A stretch of DNA of 64,000 nt from Lytechinus pictus (taxonomy: Eukaryota). The notes beneath the pieces are model-generated. The model had not been told where the DNA came from. It did not search any database and saw only the letters and a list, made by a program, of their open reading frames with translations. The DNA is taken from assembly GCF_037042905.1 (NCBI RefSeq), contig NC_087246.1, positions 36,518,001 to 36,582,000 on the forward strand, read 5' to 3'. The stretch's first letter is position 1; every line of letters begins with the position of its first letter. This document shows positions 8,873 to 38,300 of this stretch, one piece after another. The position numbers and the translations under genes were made by a program.

Positions 8873-9219
8873 CGCGAAAGCAAAGACTTGACGTTTCGGG
8901 CAGGTTGACTTTCCGAAACGTCGAGTCTACTCTCCTGCTCCTGCTACTACTCCATTCGCCGACTCAAGCCAGACTTCTCTCACCTACTCAAGCCTGTCTA
9001 CTTTTCAGCTTTCCACTCCTTCTGGTTAACAGTCTTTTTAAGGACTACACTCATTTCGAAAAGAATACTCTACTTTCAAATCTCTAATTTCTCGCCTTTC
9101 CATTTCATCTCCATTTCTATCCACTTTTCTTATCTCAGTCCCTCCCGGACTTTATACATGGTGTACCGTAAATCACTTCCGCGATTGTTCATACTACCAT
9201 GCAAACCTTCAAACATCAT
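8873..9219 (+). mobile_element. Second, diverged copy of the Penelope-like family with a short inverted 5' piece
   Basis: Shares CCGAAACGTCGAGTCT...CGCCGACTCAAGCCAG...AAGAATACTCTACT...TGGTGTACCGTAAA...ACCATGCAAACCTTCAAACA with the 11.4-11.7 kb arm. Inverted segment 8884-8899/8913-8928. Possible TSD ATAATCAACT (8863-8872, 9220-9229). Confidence 0.72.
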
Positions 9220-9904: not shown

Positions 9905-12900
9905 TTACTCTATTTTTGTTTTTCTATGTGTGAAACAACAATTGATACATCGTTTACAACATGAAACGAGAAGGAAGACGATAACGAGTACCATCCCAAC
10001 GATGAAAGCGAGGACGTCGATCGAATGAAGCTGGATGAAGTTTAGCTCCAGAGCTCTCGATCTCAGATGTGATCCTCCAAAGTTCAGGATGTTTTCAACC
10101 CAAAAAACGACAACATCATCCGGTTTGGAAAGAGAGTCCATGTAAATTCCTGAATACCGTTGGACATTCTCCAGGTAGCTGAAGAGTGGATAGAAGGGAA
10201 GATATATTGAAAAATAAAGAAAGGGAGAGAGGGAACGAAATATTATGTTTTAATAATGGTTATGTACAGCGTAATGAATATCATGCGAATTGTGAGTTAT
10301 GACCTAAGGGGAAATTAATGACCATAGTAGAAAAATTATATTGATTGAATAATTTTCGATAATTTTCATCATCTTTCGAATAGCCATCTCGTCCATGATA
10401 TGGGTAACGTTGCTTCAGATAGTTATAACACGGAATTGACCCATCAAATAGCAGTATTCTCCATAAATGTAACAGAATTGGCAAATCAAATTAAGTTGGA
10501 TGAATTCTCTAAGCAAATAGTAAGCTTTCATTGCCATCATGGTCAATATATCGAAAGAAAAAAAATCCTTCAATTACTGCTATTACAAAATAATTTTGTG
10601 TTTGTATGATTGCTATTAGACATTAAATAGAAAATACATTTCGTGATGTGAAGAGATTTTCTAAAAAAGTATCAGGCCTATATATATTTGATAATTGCTA
10701 AAATAATACAATTTCAAGGTACAACATAGCTGTCAGCAAGAAGTGCTAAGAAAACATTCATTTTACCTGGGATCTTCGAGTACGTCAGTCAGAGCTTCCC
10801 TGACGACATCGTAAGTGATGGAGTCTTTCTCAATCACTCTTCCCATTGATTTCGCCTCGACCCTGACAGCATTAGAAGGTTGATCAGCAAAGATCGGCAT
10901 GATAACCATGGGGACGCCATGCCTGATGGCTTCATAGATGCCTGCCAACCCGCCGTGGTAGATGAGAAGCCGAGCTTTGGGGTGACCTGGATATATCATT
11001 TCAGGACACAAAAATCGGGGATTTTTTTTCACTTAATATTGTTAAATGCTACTTCAAATCCTCACATCTGATTTGCTGAGAGCAAATTAGTGAGTGAAAA
11101 CATTGATGAAACTCGCTGATGTGGTTTACGGTACACCATGTGAAGTGTTGTAGAAACAGTGGATAGGAGAAGAGAAGAAATGGATAGGCGAGAAAGTGGA
11201 GATTTGAGAGTAGAGTATTCTTTCTTGAAAGTAGTCCTGAAAAGGACTGTAAACCAGGAAAGATTGATGAGTTGAGAACAGCTTGAGTAGTAGAGCTAGT
11301 GAGGAGATGCTGGCTTGAGTCGGCGAGTAGAGATGATGAGTAGTAGAGAGACTCGACGTTTCGGGCAGGTTGACTGTCCGTCTTCAGGAGACGGACAGGA
11401 GACGGACACTCCTGAAGACGGACAGTCAACCTGCCCGAAACGTCGAGTCTCTCTACTACTCATCATCTCTACTCGCCGACTCAAGCCAGCATCTCCTCAC
11501 TAGCTCTACTACTCAAGCTGTTCTCAACTCATCAATCTTTCCTGGTTTACAGTCCTTTTCAGGACTACTTTCAAGAAAGAATACTCTACTCTCAAATCTC
11601 CACTTTCTCGCCTATCCATTTCTTCTCTTCTCCTATCCACTGTTTCTACAACACTTCACATGGTGTACCGTAAACCACATCAGCAATTGTACATACCACC
11701 ATGCAAACCTTCAAACAACATTGATGAAACTATTCATGAAATGTCCCCTGTTATCCGATAATTCACCGTTGAAAGTTGTTACAGATTGTTACAAACGAAC
11801 GATACTTCGATACTTGCGTCAGAAACTCGAGTACATTTATTTGTGTCCACCCATCATCCATAATACAATACATCTTAAGGAGACATCATTTTCTTTTCTC
11901 TATCGCAAACAATACTTCCAGATAAAGTGAAAGTGAAGAGGTTGAATTTTTAAGGCTTGAACTGGATACCTAAATGAAATGTTACGTACCCAATAAATCA
12001 TTTTGTGGCATCCATTTGACCAGCATAGTGTTGTTACCAAGGTTACGAGGGCGTGGTCCGGTATAACGCCAGATGACTCTCTGTGGAAGCTCGCTGAAGA
12101 CTCTCGCAAAAGCCTCTGTCATCTCCGGCTTTGGAAGTTCACTAAAATGTGTACCCTGGTAAGGGGAAAACCATCAATCAGTCATTACATCAACTGCTGT
12201 AATGATATGCATATATTTGGGTATCCACGGATATCTCTTGAAATTGAGCTATATCGGTATTACATGGCTTTCTGCTTTTAAGACGAACATGTGGAAAATG
12301 ATCGATTTTGATATGCATTTTACTTAAAAGTAAACCAAACAAATTATTTCTGTAACAAGTTTAAAACATCCCACACTTTTTATTCAGTTCTTAGGAACAA
12401 AAATGCTTCAAGGCATTGTGTGAACAATTTTACACCGCTTGCTTTCGTTTTATTTTGTACTGTTAGCACTTAAAGGCCCAGCTCTTCTAATTCCATTTCT
12501 AGTAAACATCTTGATACATAATTTCAAAGACCATTAAGACGGTTACTTACCAGTGAAAATATGATGAAACCGTGATCGCCAGATCCATCGATGAAATCGG
12601 CGTACTCCTTTGACAAAAAAGAACGCCGTGTGAGTTAAAAAAGAGTATACATAAAGCAAGTGAAAAAGAAGATCAAAGGGCATTTTCACAGTTATGGGTC
12701 GACAGGGGTAAGGTATTTATTTTAATAGACCGTATTATGATGTCAATATCACCATAATAACTTTCATTAATCACGAAACATTGGATGCACTGTACATCAC
12801 ATAACCCGTTTTTCATATCGGTAAGCTCTATCATACAGGATCTTGCCCTTTAAGATTTGATATAGAGTTCGTGATAAAAATTATGTCACAGATGTGAATC

Positions 12901-13969
12901 TTAATAAAAAGGCTACTATCGATCTTTCAGGGCAAATTACCGTTCTAGGATTTATAGACACTGGCGTTTCGCAACTCCACATCTTCATAATTCCAAACCA
13001 CATAAACTGAAAATGTCCTACTAGCAGCCTGCATGGTATTTGAATGTTTCAACTGTATTTGGGGAGATCTGACGGAACTAGTCTCGTTGTATAACTTACC
13101 TTTGGCAAGGGTTTCAAGGGGGAATCTGTAAGGCCTTTCAATTCGATCCAGTTCGGTGTGGTGGGTCGAGGAAAATCAAATGCGAAGCTCGTCATGCACA
13201 TCCACAACTCTGCTCCGCCTAGGAGATCTTGGATGCTTTGACCGGGTGCGATACCATGTTTCTCCTTCACCTCATTCAAAGCGCCAAAGTGGGACCATCC
13301 CAGTAAGCTTGCTATCACGTGATGCTCAAAGAAGCTGCCAACCCGCTCCAGAAAGGACATCTTGTCAGAGAAAGGGAAGAAACCGAATGGCACATACGAC
13401 GACGGCGTTGGCACACCGTAGGTGTGTTCGTTGAACAGAGGATATCTTGTCCCGGTGGTCACAGCTATGAAGGGTATACCGAGGTAACTACTGAGCATTG
13501 CATCACACCCGTCGAAGGAATCGCCTATGAGGATGTCAAATGAAGATTCCTTAAGGACGGAGAGCGTCGCAGAGTCATCAAATAGGCTCTGACACCCGAT
13601 CCGCATGACGGAGAAAATCATCCCCATGATATTGAGTTTCTTCTTCAGGTCAGACTCAAAAGCAAGACCGATTAATTCTCGTTCAAGGTTCTCCAGATCT
13701 GGCAATTCGGGTGGTAACTTGAATTGGTACTGGACGGCCTTGTCGTATGTATCCTCATGGAAACCCTTGGTCCCAACTGTGGAGCTTGTGAGGATTGTCA
13801 CATTGTGGCTACCTTTGGTTAGTGCTCCTCCTATGGCTGACATCCCTTTCGAATGACTGCTCTCTCCTGGAACAAACAGTGATATGAGGATCTTGGCCCC
13901 AGTGGCCAAAGAAATGACATCGATTAAGAGAATGAAGAGGGTGAGGAAACAATAGGTGATCTCCATCAT
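9905..13969 (-). CDS. UDP-glycosyltransferase (UGT-B), 5 coding exons, about 528 aa
   Basis: Exons 13969-13100 (870), 12607-12551 (57), 12155-11990 (166), 10986-10767 (220) and 10178-9905 (274), all GT-AG, total 1587 nt in frame. Signal peptide, SSH catalytic His, DILIGD, FDFPRP, WMPQNDLLGHPKARLLIYHGG...FADQ signature, TM helix, tail KTKIE*. Confidence 0.95.
11352..11390 (-). ncRNA. Minimal type-I hammerhead ribozyme motif (mirror copy, sense with the UGT-B pre-mRNA)
   Basis: Exact reverse complement of the 11409-11447 motif. Confidence 0.7.
11409..11447 (+). ncRNA. Minimal type-I hammerhead ribozyme motif
   Basis: CTC-CTGAAGA-c-GGACAG-tcaac-CTGCCC-GAAA-CG-TC^-GAG: CUGANGA and GAAA boxes, stem II with one mismatch, palindromic ACGU stem III, GUC cleavage triplet (after 11444), stem I CTC/GAG. 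Confidence 0.72.
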
Positions 13970-27516: not shown

Positions 27517-30500
27517 CTATTCTAATTTAGTCTTCTTGCTTTTCACACAACAACTGATACATCGTTTACAACCTAAAATGAGAAGGAAGACGATAACGAG
27601 TGCGATCCCGACGATAAAAGCGAGGACGTCGATGGAATGAAGCTGAATGAAGTTTAGCTCCAAGGCTCTGGTTCTCAGGTGTGACCCTCCAAATTTCAGG
27701 ATGTGTTCCACCCAGAAGATCACAGTCTCTCCTGGCGGATTTTGCCTATCTTTGTAGATATCCGAATACCGTCGTATATTCTTCATGTAGCTGAAGAGGT
27801 AAATGAAAGAAAGCCATCGTTCTGATAAAATTGTTAATGAATTTGATCAAGGTTAAGAAAACGACAATTTTGATTGACCTTGAACAATCATTATATTAGT
27901 GAACAAACGTTGACAATAAACATGATTGAATGTTACAATACAAACAATAATCCATAGACATGATAGAGATTCGCGAGGGATATTAACTCCATTACTTTGG
28001 ATTGAACTTTCAAACTTCCAACTTTTTTTCAAATGTGTAGCCTATGTAGGTGATAATTATATGCGAAAAGTACCATTTCAAGCGATGAGTCAAAACTCCT
28101 TAAATATTAATGTGATTTGGCAGAGTTTTCACAATCATGATAAGCAATTTGTCATTTACCTTGGGTTTTCGAGAACTTCGACTATCGCTTCTTTGACAGT
28201 CACGTACGATATGGAATCCTTTCTTAGCAGTCTCCCCATTCCTTTAGCAGTGACTCTGGCGGCGTTTGCGGGTTGTTCGGCGAAGATTGGCATAACGATC
28301 ATGGGCACTTTGTGACGAATGGCTTCATAAATACCCGCTAGACCGCCATGGTACATCAGCAGCCGAACTTTTGGGTGACCTAATAGAAGGTGAATATTCC
28401 GGATTTTATATTTTGTGACCTTTTGTTTTCATTGTCATGATGTATTTTCTGTTATTATATTTGATTCACAATCGGACGATGGTACACGTTTATAAGTGTC
28501 GGAAAGAGAATGCGGCAGTTTGAAACAAAATCTGGACTGTGATAAAATCGGATTCTCGATCGATCTGTAAGCTTCTACAATTTCAACTCAAAACTACATC
28601 TATCACCAGACAGAAAACAGAAAAACTTGACAGAATACCTGTTATTTTCCAATCATAATGTTTTTTAATTCTAACTTTCTTCATAAAAGCTAAGTTGCAT
28701 AATATCGTTTAAATATAATAAAAATTTATATCGCGCACATACTGTATATTCTACTGCAGATAATACTTGGTATTACCCCAGCATTCAATGATTAAATCCA
28801 GCCGGGTACCCATTCACCAGCTGCATCGAACGCAGCAAATGTGGATATATATATTGCTGAAGGAAATTAATGCCTGAAATAGAATTCGAACCCATGACCC
28901 TCTTATTCAAAGGCTAGAGTCAGGACCACTACACCATTACACTTTGAGACATGAAAATGTGATGATTTCGTCAATTTGTTATTTTCTAATGGTAGTTTGA
29001 ATCCAATTATATATACCCAGTAGGTCGTTCTGTGGCATCCATGTCACAATCATGGTGTTGTTACCAAGGTTACGCGGGCGTGGTCCGGTATAACGCCAGA
29101 TGACTCTCTGTGGAAGCTCACTGAAAACTCTTGCAAAAACTTCCGCCGTTTCTTGTCTCGGGAACTCACTGAAATGCGTACCCTGCACGTGTTTTAAAAA
29201 GAAATCCGTAAAATATCGCAGTCTCTTGGCTTTATTGACATTTGCAATGACTTGTTTATTTTGCTAGTTACATATTTTATTAAAGCCTTGTCCTTCGTGT
29301 GCCATTGTCGCAGCACATATTTCAAATTCGATATTACAATGCATGGGACAAATTGTGAAGGAAATTGAAAAAAGTCTCTGTATCAGCTTTGTTAGGCCAT
29401 TTTTCCCAAGTGAGTAAGATAGGGATGATCACAGTGGCTGTATATCAACAGAAACGACGAATGCTTGCGAACGTGGCGAATTTTAGATTTCACTGTGGTT
29501 CTAAAAATTTGTAAAATGTTGGGGAAAAGTTCATAATTCCGTTCTCGCAAGCAGTTGTTTTGAAAATTCGTCGGAAAGAAATTTTTGACAATCTCTTTCT
29601 CCGCATATGGTTACTAACGTTTGCAGTCCTAAGCCTTTGAACACGTGCAACCACGTGACCATGCGGCCCCTCTACAATATCCACCCATTGTCACAATGTC
29701 ATGAATGTTCAAAAGTGTTTGTAACATTCGTCAGATTGGGTGGACGAAGCCAAACATTACTGCAGTTTTCAGGATTCGTTACTCTGGGCGATACATCCTC
29801 TATCTGCTCGGTGGCGATATGGTTGGTTAAAGATCGACGAGTCATAGGCGTATACGTATGCCCTGATTTTAAACATGACTAGCTTTGATAATAATATTTG
29901 AGATATTTTTAATCAATTATCTGAAAGCTTGGCTATACTACTCACCAATGAGAAGAGGATGAAGCCATGCTCCCCCGACCCTTCTACAAAGTCTGCATAT
30001 TGCTATGATTAGAGATAAAAGGAATAAGGAAGGGTAGTAGAAAACCAAAAATAAGGAATGAGACGGAAAAGAAAACTAGAAATTCAAAGAATGCACTGGA
30101 TCGTTTAATTATGATATACCTTTATATTGAAGGAAATTTGATTCGTTGGGTTACATTAGCGAAAGTAGGGAGTTTTCACACCGGTACGCAGAACGCTTTT
30201 AAGAACATAGAAAATTTATTGTCAATTGCCCTTCCGATGACAAATATTTGCAATTTTTCGTCAGCTCCGAAACTAAGGATGAAACTGAAGTTCCGGTTCA
30301 CAAAGGACCCCAGCTGTTCGTTGTTATTTGACGAGAATTTTCATTAAATTTTCTTTAATCTTGAAAACATTCTAAGTGGCAGTGCGAAAATTTCCTAATA
30401 TAATTCCACCGCGACCTCTTATATAGGGGTACAATGAGAATACTTTTAACCTATACGTGCATGCATGTGGGGTGCTTAGGTCTAGGAGATGTTAGGAAAC

Positions 30501-35313: not shown

Positions 35314-38300
35314 TCATTCAACTTTTAATTTCTCTCTGTTAAAGCAACAAGCGATACATCGTTTAAAACATGAAACGAGAAGGAAGGCGATAACGAGCAA
35401 GATCCCGACAATGAAAGCGAGGACGTCGATGGAATGAAGCTGGATAAAGTTTAGCTCCAAGGCTCTGGTTCTCAGGTGTGACCCTCCAAATTTGAGGATG
35501 TGTTCTACCCAGTAGATCACAACATCATTTGGATTGGACTGAGTATCTCTGTAGATTCTAGAGATTCGTTGGACGTTTTCTTTGTAGCTGGAAATTAAAA
35601 CGTAAATACAGTATGCCGTAAATAATTATGATCTTCTCCCTCTATTATGATTATTTGCGAAGTAAACTAAATCGGCTAAAAAGAAATTGACCACTGATGA
35701 AACGCATGAATATGAGAAAATTGGCCTTCTTCTACCCCCCCCCCTCCCCTTACCGTATGATCCCATATGTTAATTCGCAGCAAAATGCAAGTATAGGAAG
35801 AATTTGCTATTCTCTGTCTCTTCCAACGTTTTATAAGTTAGAAATTGACAAAATCCAACTATTATCGGTTGATTTTAACTCCAAGACTTGAACCGAAAAA
35901 CCCTTCTCTTTCCATATTCGAAATATATAACTGATAGACAGATAGAACTATGTCATTGAGCAAAGCATCATTGACCTAGTTTCTACCATGGAGCTATCTG
36001 TGTTAATAGCTCAATGTTTCTACCATTCTCCAAAGAACAACATTGTATCTTCTGTTCACCCGAGAGCCGTCCTTGCTTCTCTTTCGTGTATTATGATTAT
36101 ATAACTCATGGGTAGACTCTGTTTACGAGCAAGACTTACGCAAAACAGAATAAAAGGTTTGTCCTCAGGTTGAGGTCAGCTATAGGTCGCACCATGGAAG
36201 CTCCTTGGTCGCACGCGACAGAGATCTTTCATCAATGCAGGTCGCACGCGACTGAGTGTCTGGCCCACCGTTACGTAATAGAAGGACAATCTCTGTTTAC
36301 AAGCGAATTAGAGTCTGACCTCAGCTGAACCATAGAGCTATAGCTCTATGGCTGAACGCAACGAGGACAAGCAGGTAATCGGGATGAAAACAAGATCGTG
36401 AACTATGCCAAGGGCTATGCGATTTCAATTTTCTGACACACCCGAGACGGCTTAGCTTTGCTCGCCATGATTTAGGCCTACACTGAATATCCAGGTAGGA
36501 AAGTACAAAGAGACAAAATCTTAATTCGTGAAAATATGATGGTGTCCAATCCAGTAAAAAATACATCAAAAAAAAAAAAAAAAAAAATCGGTCGGACACT
36601 AAAGCTGTTATTATTTTGACCAATCCTCTTTTTTTAAAGAATGAATCATAAGCCAGTGACGGATCTAGGGGGGGGGGTTAGGAGTTTAAACCCCCACCTC
36701 GGGCTCTCTAAAAATGATTTAAAAAAAGGAGTGTGTGATTAAACTCCAACACCCTTCCTTGTTTACGAGAGTCGCGCAAGCAGAACAGTGGTGGGTCTAC
36801 GGTGGGGGGGGGGGGGGGTTAGGAGGCTGGCATAACGTTGCAGCTCATCGTTGGGTCAAACCAACTTGTCAACCCCCTCTACTAGAAGCTATAGATCCGC
36901 CACCGTAAACCTTTCGTGATTGTACCATATCCCCGGCGCCATCGGATGCATTGTTATCATTGGTGAGCTCTGAGTATTCTAGTGGTGCTCGGTACCTCTT
37001 TCCGAAAAATTATCATTCCATAGGAGTCGAAATAAAGTTCATATCATAAAATATCATTATCAGGCAGGTGTTTCATAAATCTGTTGGTAAAGTTACGCAC
37101 GACTTTACGAACGACTGTGGAACATGTTTTAAGTTCAGGTCAGATGCATAGTCAAATATATAGGGATATATCATTCAGCACAAAAAGGGGTCATGCGTAA
37201 AGTCACTGTAACTTGCGAACAGGTCTAAAGTTTATGGAACACACACCTGGTACGCACTTAACATCGGTGACACGACATTTGCTCTGGCGACCATTACTTT
37301 AAGCTTTATTTCGTCTAAGATGTGGGGTTAGAGCAATAGGATTTTATGTTAGGTTATTGTTAAATCCAGGGTTAAAGTTGGTCATTCCATTAATGTGTGG
37401 AATTTGCAGCGGAGCGATTGTCGCCGGGGCAAATGTCATGGAGAATGGCAAATATTGACTGACATTTTACAGAAGTAAAGGGAGGTCCAGCGGGATTTGA
37501 AATCCGGACCTACCAACCTACCTTGGATTTGAAAGCACCTCCGTCACCACAGTGTTGACTGTCTCGTAAGAGATCGCATCCTTCTGAAGCCGTTTCCCTA
37601 TTCCTCTGACGACTACCTTGACAGCATTAGATTCTTGTTCAGCAAAGATTGGCATGATTACCATGGGAACAGCGTGATAAATGGCCTCCAAGATTCCTTT
37701 AGCGCCACCATGGTATACCAACAGTCTGGCTTTTGGGTGACCTAGAATTCATGACAATATCACAAGATATCTGTTTTATTTTGATCTTTGATTATGATCG
37801 GGCTATTGGGTGACCTAGAATTCCTGATATTGCAAGATATCTGACTGCTTGACATTTGATTTAATATGGTATTTGAATTTCCATATTATATCATCAATGC
37901 TTGATATTTTGATATCTTATTCAGTATCTATTATTTTGATAACAATTATTTAATGCCTGGGCATTTTCACAGTAACTGACGTTAAATGGCTCAATTTTAC
38001 ACAATTTTCATTGTGTGTATGATTATCTCTAAAACAACAAATGATGGGAGTTTGCTTATCTCTAAAACAACAGATGGGAGTTTGCTTGATTATCTCTAAA
38101 ACAACAAATGATGGGAGTTTGCTTAAAAGAAAACTCCCATCATTTGTTGTTTTAGAGATAATCATACACACAATGAAAAGTGTGTAAAATTGTGCTGTGT
38201 AACGTCAGTTACCGCGAAAATGCCCACCCGAGTAATGAGCTGGGGCTGAATACTGTAGCACATGCCAACCAACTTACACGAGTTGGATAAACGAGAATAT

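What the first reader, a model, noticed from the sequence alone, without database searches (positions are those of the whole stretch)
11099..11731. Back-to-back hammerhead ribozymes on a perfect 276-bp hairpin inside a UGT intron
Seen: a 603-bp insert bounded by a 15-bp TSD, made of two identical inverted arms, each starting with CTGAAGA-stem-GAAACGTC. Known: Penelope-like elements carry minimal type-I hammerheads with a palindromic stem III, cleave best as dimers, and often leave inverted pseudo-LTR junctions. Inference: this is a very young ORF-less Penelope/retrozyme derivative. Both strands encode a ribozyme. In the UGT-B pre-mRNA the antisense arm is transcribed first and could sequester the sense ribozyme in a long duplex, a built-in self-silencing arrangement that would let the insert be tolerated.
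Basis: partly seen in the sequence, partly recalled or inferred. Interest (0 to 1): 0.8.

Follow-up and report, generated by a model that had tools for sequence, protein, structure and literature searches.

The report
Young inverted Penelope-like retrotransposon insertion
The hairpin is a very recent, ordinary insertion of the tail end of a Penelope-like jumping gene, laid down as two head-to-head copies that each carry that family's usual minimal hammerhead ribozyme motif.

Summary
There is a 276-nt perfect inverted repeat (277 nt with one end mismatch), an 18-nt junction, a 15-bp target duplication, and a CTGAAGA…GAAACGTC motif at the inner end of each arm. The insert lies in an intron of a minus-strand UGT gene.

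The arm is the last ~313 nt of an autonomous Penelope-like element (PLE) with RT and GIY-YIG found elsewhere in this genome. There are about 250 near-identical arms. About half of the sampled insertions have the same head-to-head form, each with its own 8-15-bp duplication.

One arm ends at position ~313 and the other at ~277-281. That is the published one-sided 30-40-bp PLE "tail".

The motif meets every sequence feature of the published minimal PLE hammerhead. It scores nothing against the Rfam hammerhead models.

RNA-seq shows no intron signal and no read ends at the cleavage site. Across the genome, however, copy 5' ends fall exactly after the predicted scissile bond far more often than at neighbouring positions.

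The "self-silencing" idea has no support, because the hairpin is a by-product of integration. This is a new member of a known kind. Other readers in this scan noted the same structure elsewhere in this genome.

The parts
11099..11113 (.). Left copy of the target-site duplication (AACATTGATGAAACT)
   Evidence: other insertions of the family carry their own 8-15-bp duplications
11114..11390 (-). Left arm: PLE 3' region, arm positions 277 to 1, in inverted orientation and without the tail
   Evidence: The outer end at arm position 277 matches the 274-287 cluster of inverted partners
11351..11391 (-). Minimal hammerhead motif of the left arm. This is the copy that is sense in the UGT pre-mRNA. Predicted cleavage is after C at 11355, and helix I has only 3 pairs plus a U.U mismatch
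11391..11408 (.). 18-nt head-to-head junction (ACGGACAGGAGACGGACA), made of short reiterations of GAGACGGACAG
   Evidence: family D1; comparable zigzag junctions occur in L004, L016, L028 and L030
11408..11448 (+). Minimal type-I hammerhead motif of the right arm. Helix I is 11408-11411 / 11445-11448. CUGAAGA is 11412-11418 and the unpaired C is 11419. Helix II is 11420-11425 / 11431-11436 with an A.C mismatch. GAAA is 11437-11440. The palindrome ACGU is 11440-11443, and C17 is 11444
   Evidence: feature list of PMC4209133. A related expressed family shares exactly this block
11409..11684 (+). Right arm: PLE 3' region, arm positions 1-276
   Evidence: 99-100% identical to the 3' end of RT + GIY-YIG copies
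11685..11721 (+). One-sided 32-37-nt tail of the right arm. Its last 5 nt overlap the duplication, and A11685 is private to this copy
   Evidence: the tail is described in PMC8557442 and PMC11167929
11717..11731 (.). Right copy of the target-site duplication
10767..10986 (-). UGT exon downstream of the intron (signature HPKARLLIYHGG...), expressed
11988..12156 (-). UGT exon upstream of the intron (approximate ends), expressed

Best explanation
The 603-bp insert is one recent retrotransposition event of an active Penelope-like element (PLE) family. It holds only the element's last ~313 nt, present twice and head to head.

Shown:
- The arm is 99-100% identical to the 3' untranslated end of ~3.2-kb copies that encode RT and a GIY-YIG nuclease.
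- About 250 such arms exist in the genome.
- About half of the sampled insertions are head-to-head pairs, each flanked by its own 8-15-bp duplication.
- In the pairs, one arm ends at about position 310-316, the tailed end. The other ends at position 274-287.

Inferred:
- The PLE protein cut both DNA strands 10-15 bp apart.
- Each 3' end primed a cDNA on a short PLE RNA, one from the distal start site and one from the internal start site ~35 nt upstream.
- Both cDNAs ran to the RNA's 5' end, which lies at the 5' edge of the hammerhead. They were then joined by microhomology switches, which left the 18-nt junction.

Each arm carries the family's minimal type-I hammerhead, which has no helix III and needs a second sense copy to fold. 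In this intron the one sense copy per transcript sits inside a ~277-bp duplex, so it is most likely inert here. The hairpin is a by-product of integration, not an adaptation.
For: - Family and partner: one search found 65 scored matches at 98-100% identity from 1246 first-look candidates. Searches found longer copies. One search found RVT_1 and GIY-YIG. One search found a 920-aa open frame and a ~3.25-kb unit preceded by a partial tandem copy and an inverted piece. One search shows the GVYKIPCDCGKVYIGETGR motif.
- Copy counts: 216 + 35 exact arms and 173 exact tails.
- Architecture: 15 of 30 loci have an inverted partner. Fourteen of those have an 8-15-bp duplication around the whole pair, and the outer end of the inverted arm is at position 274-287 in all but two.
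- Even a long copy (L041) starts with a 21-nt inverted piece that ends at position 276.
- Literature: an inverted 5'-truncated copy plus a one-sided 30-40-bp tail is typical of PLEs (PMC8557442). A PLE protein cuts and extends both strands and starts RT at two sites that bracket the tail (PMC11167929).
- Motif: all features of the min-HHR are present, namely an unpaired nucleotide after A9, G10.1-C11.1, a long helix II, a 4-bp helix I and the ACGU palindrome (PMC4209133).
- Genome-wide there are 806 motif matches against 58 for the reversed control. They fall into several families whose helix II differs by compensatory changes.
- Hairpin fold: -571.8 kcal/mol.
Against: - No Rfam hammerhead model matches.
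- Helix II of this young subfamily has an A.C mismatch where older copies and another species have A-U.
- No RNA-seq read ends pile up at the cleavage site (table 6).
- The two-strand priming model is inferred from end positions and from in vitro work on a lizard PLE. It was not observed here.
- No read or contig that was shown spans this particular locus, so the inversion at this site rests on the assembly plus the many parallel loci.
Confidence: 0.88

Rival explanations
1. The inverted arrangement is a built-in self-silencing device: the antisense arm, transcribed first in the UGT pre-mRNA, sequesters the ribozyme and so makes the insertion tolerable.
For: In the minus-strand transcript the antisense arm does come first, and the predicted duplex is extremely stable. 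The flanking UGT exons are expressed at similar depth.
Against: The same architecture occurs in about half of the sampled insertions, and it is a general PLE trait (PMC8557442). Single-arm copies are equally common. A lone minimal hammerhead does not cleave in vitro (PMC4209133), so there is nothing to silence.
Confidence: 0.05
2. The hairpin arose by snap-back. One cDNA reached the RNA 5' end, folded back on itself and was copied, rather than arising from two independently primed cDNAs.
For: The arms are identical. The junctions show zigzag template switches near the 5' end.
Against: Snap-back copying should run to the end of the first cDNA, tail included. The inverted arm instead stops at position 274-287 in 13 of 15 pairs, and a 21-nt inverted piece in L041 ends at the same place. 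This fits an independent start at the internal RT site (PMC11167929).
Confidence: 0.12
3. The intronic perfect hairpin is used by the host as a hairpin-RNA source of small RNAs against the PLE family.
For: A ~277-bp perfect duplex in an expressed gene is a plausible Dicer substrate. Both strands of the family are transcribed.
Against: There is no intronic coverage at all in two total-RNA runs. No small-RNA data were available. The Rfam miRNA hits are shape-only and far below threshold.
Confidence: 0.08
4. It is a foldback or MITE-type DNA transposon with long terminal inverted repeats, or an assembly artefact.
For: It has perfect long inverted repeats with a flanking duplication.
Against: The arm is the 3' end of a retroelement. 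The ends are asymmetric because of the one-sided tail. Duplications vary from 8 to 15 bp, and inner junctions vary from copy to copy. Many independent loci share the form, which argues against an artefact.
Confidence: 0.02

Closest known systems
Minimal hammerhead ribozymes (min-HHR) of metazoan Penelope-like elements (Cervera & de la Pena 2014, PMC4209133; dimer cleavage also reported for small PLE hammerheads)
   Same: The CUGANGA and GAAA boxes are present. There is no helix III or loop 3, and ACGU forms a palindrome before C17. An extra nucleotide follows A9, G10.1-C11.1 is kept, helix II has 6 positions and helix I has 4 bp. The motif lies in the repeat-forming 3' region of a PLE. That paper also reports pairs on opposite strands 100-700 bp apart.
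   Different: Helix II carries an A.C mismatch in this young subfamily. The minus-strand copy has a weakened helix I. Activity was not tested.
Canonical PLE insertion architecture (Craig et al. 2021, PMC8557442; Frangieh et al. 2024, PMC11167929)
   Same: The copy is heavily 5'-truncated with an adjacent inverted 5'-truncated copy. There is a 30-40-bp tail at one end only, a target duplication, and a hammerhead in the pseudo-LTR region.
   Different: Both copies are truncated at almost the same point, the 5' edge of the hammerhead. The result is a nearly symmetric hairpin with no ORF at all.
Non-LTR retrozymes of animals (Cervera & de la Pena 2020, PMC7229834; bioRxiv 10.64898/2026.07.22.740005)
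   Same: They are short ORF-less hammerhead-bearing units derived from PLE pseudo-LTRs and mobilised in trans.
   Different: Retrozymes are head-to-tail tandem repeats that give circular RNAs. This insert is head-to-head, and no tandem or circular form was seen at this locus.
L1 twin priming (inversion with 5' truncation)
   Same: Two cDNAs primed from the two sides of a staggered break give an inverted 5' segment within one duplication.
   Different: In L1 the second primer anneals at variable internal sites. Here the second start is fixed about 35 nt from the 3' end, as expected from the PLE internal RT start site.

Membership tests
min-HHR of metazoan PLEs (PMC4209133) | Catalytic boxes C3-U4-G5-A6-N7-G8-A9 and G12-A13-A14, with H17 after U16.1 | tested here: met
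   CUGAAGA at 11412-11418, GAA at 11437-11439, GUC at 11442-11444. The same holds on the - strand.
min-HHR of metazoan PLEs (PMC4209133) | No helix III or loop 3; positions 15.1-16.1 form a palindrome able to pair between two copies | tested here: met
   ACGU at 11440-11443 has no loop. Energy evaluation of a structure imposed by hand on two copies (helix II in each, intermolecular ACGU:ACGU helix) gave -10.7 kcal/mol; the dimer's own minimum, -21.0 kcal/mol, is a different fold.
min-HHR of metazoan PLEs (PMC4209133) | Unpaired nucleotide between A9 and G10.1, and a G10.1-C11.1 pair | tested here: met
   C11419 is unpaired and G11420 pairs with C11436. The other motif families of this genome also have the extra C or A.
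min-HHR of metazoan PLEs (PMC4209133) | Long helix II (6-8 bp) supported by compensatory changes between families | tested here: met
   There are six positions with one A.C mismatch here, and A-U in the variant CCTGTCCG. The GACAAG/CUUGUC and GACCAG/CUGGUC families differ by a double change. The boxes were fixed by the search pattern; the helix was not.
min-HHR of metazoan PLEs (PMC4209133) | Short helix I (4-5 bp) | tested here: met
   ACUC/GAGU on the + strand is part of the minimum-energy fold of the 64-nt monomer. The - strand copy has 3 pairs plus a U.U mismatch.
min-HHR of metazoan PLEs (PMC4209133) | Lies in the repeat-forming end of an element encoding RT + GIY-YIG | tested here: met
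   The motif lies ~215 nt after the stop codon of the RVT_1 + GIY-YIG ORF.
min-HHR of metazoan PLEs (PMC4209133) | Self-cleavage after H17 (as a dimer or with protein) | not testable with these tools
   Evidence is indirect only. There are no read-end pile-ups at 11444/11445 in two RNA runs. However, genomic 5' junctions exactly after C17 number 35, of which about 16-19 of the 30 examined are real junctions. Five control positions gave 0-4.
Rfam hammerhead families (Hammerhead_1 RF00163 and clan) | Covariance-model score at or above the gathering threshold | tested here: not met
   No hammerhead hit at E<=1 in 3 kb or at E<=10 in 76 nt. I take this to reflect the absence of helix III and loop 3 in this motif; the content of the Rfam models was not examined here.
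PLE insertion (PMC8557442) | 5' truncation, adjacent inverted 5'-truncated copy, one-sided 30-40-bp tail, target duplication | tested here: met
Animal non-LTR retrozyme (PMC7229834) | Head-to-tail tandem units, each with a hammerhead, giving circular RNA | tested here: not met
   The two units are head-to-head. Circular RNA was not tested.
Foldback / MITE DNA transposon | Symmetric terminal inverted repeats and a fixed-length duplication | tested here: not met
   The tail is one-sided and duplications range from 8 to 15 bp.
miRNA precursors mir-4662 / MIR1432 | Rfam gathering score | tested here: not met
   Scores of 49.9 against 97 bits and 39.9 against 90 bits. The hits reflect hairpin shape only.

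The most novel reading that the evidence does not exclude
The genome itself records in vivo hammerhead cleavage. A few percent of this family's insertions begin exactly at the nucleotide after the predicted scissile bond (arm position 37). This would mean that ribozyme-cut RNAs were used as templates. It would be direct in vivo evidence that minimal PLE hammerheads cleave, which RNA-seq has so far failed to show.
Probability: 0.4. Interest if true: 0.45.

Novelty: new member of a known kind. Interest (0 to 1): 0.25.

Why it matters
In itself the insert is an ordinary insertion, so the high first-stage score should come down. The family is still useful, because it is very young, abundant and transcribed. 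Its insertions display three things cleanly:
- the two 3' start sites seen so far only in vitro for a lizard PLE;
- head-to-head joining within one target duplication;
- a spike of 5' ends at the ribozyme's cleavage site.

A full census of this one genome could therefore test how PLEs integrate and whether their minimal hammerheads act in vivo. For annotation, such perfect hairpins in introns should be read as PLE integration products, not as regulatory RNAs or miRNA genes.

Tried and rejected
- Rfam cmscan over 3 kb and over the 76-nt motif gave no hammerhead. It gave only sub-threshold miRNA-hairpin hits and chance C/D-box hits.
- RNA-seq laid on 10700-12300 gave no intron coverage, so nothing can be said about the hairpin RNA of this locus. 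Reads on the arms come from other copies. No read-end pile-up was found at the cleavage site. The exon-exon joint was not among the rows shown.
- No shown contig spans the locus, so neither the inversion nor an empty-site allele could be checked at this site.
The census therefore rests on pattern counts at six positions.
- A search of the window for an uninterrupted copy of the intron found none.
- Pfam on the 920-aa frame of L051 gave RVT_1 only. GIY-YIG was seen at 22.2 bits (cut-off 22.6) in L041 and by its motif.
- The foldback DNA transposon, assembly artefact and miRNA readings were considered and rejected (see rivals).
- The PLE clade (Penelope/Poseidon, Neptune or Nematis) was not determined.

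Full report
**1. Observation**

The sequence is as described. The arms at 11115-11390 and 11409-11684 are 276 nt long and 100% complementary, with 18 nt between them. The 15-nt direct repeat AACATTGATGAAACT lies at 11099-11113 and 11717-11731.

As RNA the insert folds into one long hairpin of -571.8 kcal/mol. Shuffled controls average -180 kcal/mol, giving z = -62.5.

Each arm starts at its inner end with CTGAAGA, a stem and GAAACGTC. On the + strand these are 11412-11418 and 11437-11444. The mirror copy lies on the - strand.

Three details need adjusting:
- C11114 belongs to the left arm. Other copies read G at arm position 277, and the inverted arms of L003, L005, L008 and L027 start with the same C. 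The right arm has a private A at 11685, which nearly all RNA reads contradict. The repeat is therefore 277 nt with one mismatch.
- The AACAT that opens the right-hand duplication is also the element's own 3' end in most copies. The duplication is therefore 10-15 bp.
- The junction begins inside helix I. The + strand motif has ACUC/GAGU, and the - strand motif has UCUC/GAGU.

**2. Host gene**

The gene is on the - strand. ORF pieces at 13049-13969, 11982-12122 and 10763-10987 match Pfam UDPGT at profile positions 4-263, 296-337 and 337-409. The insert therefore lies in the intron between two consecutive exons, about 127 nt upstream of the 3' splice site. Of this ~1.0-kb intron, 618 bp is the insert plus one duplication copy.

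**3. What the arm is**

A search of the window's own genome (811 Mb) with the right arm gave 1246 first-look candidates. The 40 candidates that were scored gave 65 matches, at 98-100% identity. Exact-word counts give 216 + 35 arms and 173 tails.

Some copies continue upstream of the arm:
- In L041 the arm is preceded by an ORF with RVT_1 (E = 1.2e-11) and GIY-YIG (22.2 bits against a cut-off of 22.6). The nuclease motif is GVYKIPCDCGKVYIGETGR.
- L051 holds a ~3.25-kb unit with a 920-aa open frame. It is preceded by a partial direct copy of the arm (positions 195-308) and an inverted piece.
- The nearest Atlas clusters carry HTH_animal, RVT_1, DUF8422 and GIY-YIG.

The arm is therefore the last ~313 nt of an autonomous Penelope-like element. 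The hammerhead motif sits about 215 nt after the stop codon.

**4. The hairpin is the family's normal way of inserting**

Of 30 loci, 15 have an inverted partner directly at the 5' end of the main arm. In 14 of these the whole pair is flanked by its own duplication of 8-15 bp, so each pair is one insertion event. Single arms have duplications of 8-11 bp.

The main arm runs on 2-8 nt past arm position 308 (...CAAAC followed by AA, AACAT or AACATC, sometimes more), so it ends at about position 310-316. The outer end of the inverted arm is at position 274-287, mostly 277-281. The one exception among the long partners is L021, which reaches 308; in L029 the inverted piece is only 23 nt long and ends at position 29. 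Even the long, 5'-truncated copy in L041 begins with a 21-nt inverted piece covering positions 256-276.

The inner junctions vary. Some show several back-and-forth switches, as in L004, L016, L028 and L030. The window's 18-nt spacer is made of reiterated GAGACGGACAG.

This matches the literature:
- PLE insertions are strongly 5'-truncated and often carry an adjacent inverted 5'-truncated copy. They have a 30-40-bp tail, often at one end only (PMC8557442).
- A purified PLE protein cuts and extends both DNA strands. It starts reverse transcription at two internal sites that bracket the tail (PMC11167929).
- Pairs of minimal hammerheads on opposite strands 100-700 bp apart were already noted in Schistosoma (PMC4209133).

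My mechanism is inferred from these end positions. Two cDNAs were primed from the two sides of one staggered break, one from the distal start site and one from the internal site. They were joined head to head. A snap-back origin is less likely, because it does not explain why the inverted arm stops ~35 nt short.

**5. The hammerhead motif**

No Rfam hammerhead model matches, at E<=1 over 3 kb or at E<=10 over 76 nt. This motif has no helix III or loop 3. I take that to be why it scores nothing; I did not examine the models themselves.

Against the published descriptor of minimal PLE hammerheads (PMC4209133), every sequence feature is present:
- the two catalytic boxes;
- the ACGU palindrome in place of helix III, followed by C17;
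- an unpaired C after A9;
- G10.1-C11.1;
- a six-position helix II;
- a 4-bp helix I.

Helices I and II are the minimum-energy fold of the 64-nt monomer.

Genome-wide, CTGANGA-N(8-30)-GAAACGTC occurs 806 times, against 58 for the reversed control. The matches fall into several families whose helix II sequences differ yet stay paired, for example GACAAG/CUUGUC against GACCAG/CUGGUC. All have the extra nucleotide after A9.

RNA reads reveal a related expressed family that shares only 11408-11448. That block runs exactly from the first base of helix I to the last, with unrelated sequence on both sides (loose ends at 11408 and 11448, agreement 0.98 at 11448 and about 0.75 at 11408).

The young subfamily has an A.C mismatch in helix II. 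Older copies, a quarter to a third of RNA reads, and most DNA of a second species have T at 11434, which restores A-U.

**6. Is it active?**

This could not be tested directly. Two rRNA-depleted RNA runs show no place where molecules begin or end at 11444/11445 (table 6). The same negative result was reported for the lizard element (PMC11167929).

The genome gives a different signal. I counted copies in which the base before a given arm position is not the consensus base. These are either junctions or point changes:

| Arm position | Count |
|---|---|
| 37 (first base after the scissile bond) | 35 |
| 36 | 0 |
| 38 | 4 |
| 41 | 4 |
| 47 | 3 |
| 33 | 1 |

Of the 30 position-37 cases inspected, about 11 are C17 substitutions (C17 lies in a CpG). 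About 16-19 are real 5' ends at 37, several with their own duplications. One is a symmetric head-to-head junction at 37|37. Contigs of the second species show the same 11354|11445 joint.

Caveats:
- Three junctions share a GAG microhomology.
- A few junctions are ambiguous.
- Some lie in duplicated DNA.
- The controls were not inspected copy by copy.

I read this as suggestive evidence that some template RNAs had been cut at the predicted site.

**7. This locus**

The flanking UGT exons are covered at about 20-30x. The unique intron flanks are at 0x. There is therefore no sign of disturbed expression and no information on the hairpin RNA.

A transcript of either strand has one sense motif and its perfect complement. 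The sense motif cannot meet a second sense copy in cis, and it is buried in a ~277-bp duplex. I therefore consider the motifs inert at this site and the hairpin a by-product. Small-RNA production from the hairpin is possible but untested.

**8. Verdict**

The retrozyme label and the self-silencing idea are not supported.

This is a new member of a known kind. Other first-stage notes in this genome describe the same structure at other loci, including another 276-bp fold-back in a different intron. An earlier follow-up called the genome a sea urchin's, which I did not test.

Noticed in passing
genome-wide; examples L053, L055, L059, L064, L068 around locus position 1500: Copy 5' ends fall exactly at arm position 37, the base after the predicted hammerhead cleavage site. 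The count is 35, against 0-4 at five nearby control positions. This may be a footprint of in vivo self-cleavage.
   Followed up: partly
L002, L010, L011, L014, L015, L023, L024 just before locus position 1501: Most short copies begin within about -12 to +9 nt of the hammerhead's 5' edge. The consensus there (CTCACTCC) resembles an initiator element. The ~313-nt units may therefore be copies of short transcripts that start at the hammerhead.
   Followed up: no
window 8874-9218: An older copy of a related element, 73% identical to arm positions 27-308. It has a short inverted piece (arm 11-42) at its 5' end and its own duplication ATAATCAACT. The hammerhead is truncated.
   Followed up: partly
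window 11408-11448 (RNA reads): An expressed related element shares only the 41-nt hammerhead block and has different flanks. About a quarter to a third of reads at 11434 have T (restoring the A-U pair in helix II), and about 40-50% of first-mate-on-+ reads at 11444 have T (GUU instead of GUC).
   Followed up: no
window 11114-11721 (RNA reads): In run X23 most reads on the arms are antisense to the element, calibrated on the UGT exons. Many reads run into unrelated flanks. This suggests read-through from host genes rather than the element's own transcripts.
   Followed up: no
run X9: DNA of a second species holds the arm at summed contig depths thousands of times that of the single-copy UGT exon. 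The family is therefore shared and very abundant there.
   Followed up: no
L041:2110-5248: Two adjacent ORFs with Exo_endo_phos and RVT_1 domains, a LINE-type element, lie just upstream of the PLE copy.
   Followed up: no
L077-L081 (G000 C17, 9.01-9.03 Mb): A cluster of repeated units in which arm sequence up to about position 175 is joined head-to-tail to position 37. This may be a tandem or segmentally duplicated arrangement.
   Followed up: no
window 28156-28380 and 37564-37742: Sequences 69-70% identical to the UGT signature exon. The window holds a cluster of UGT paralogues.
   Followed up: no
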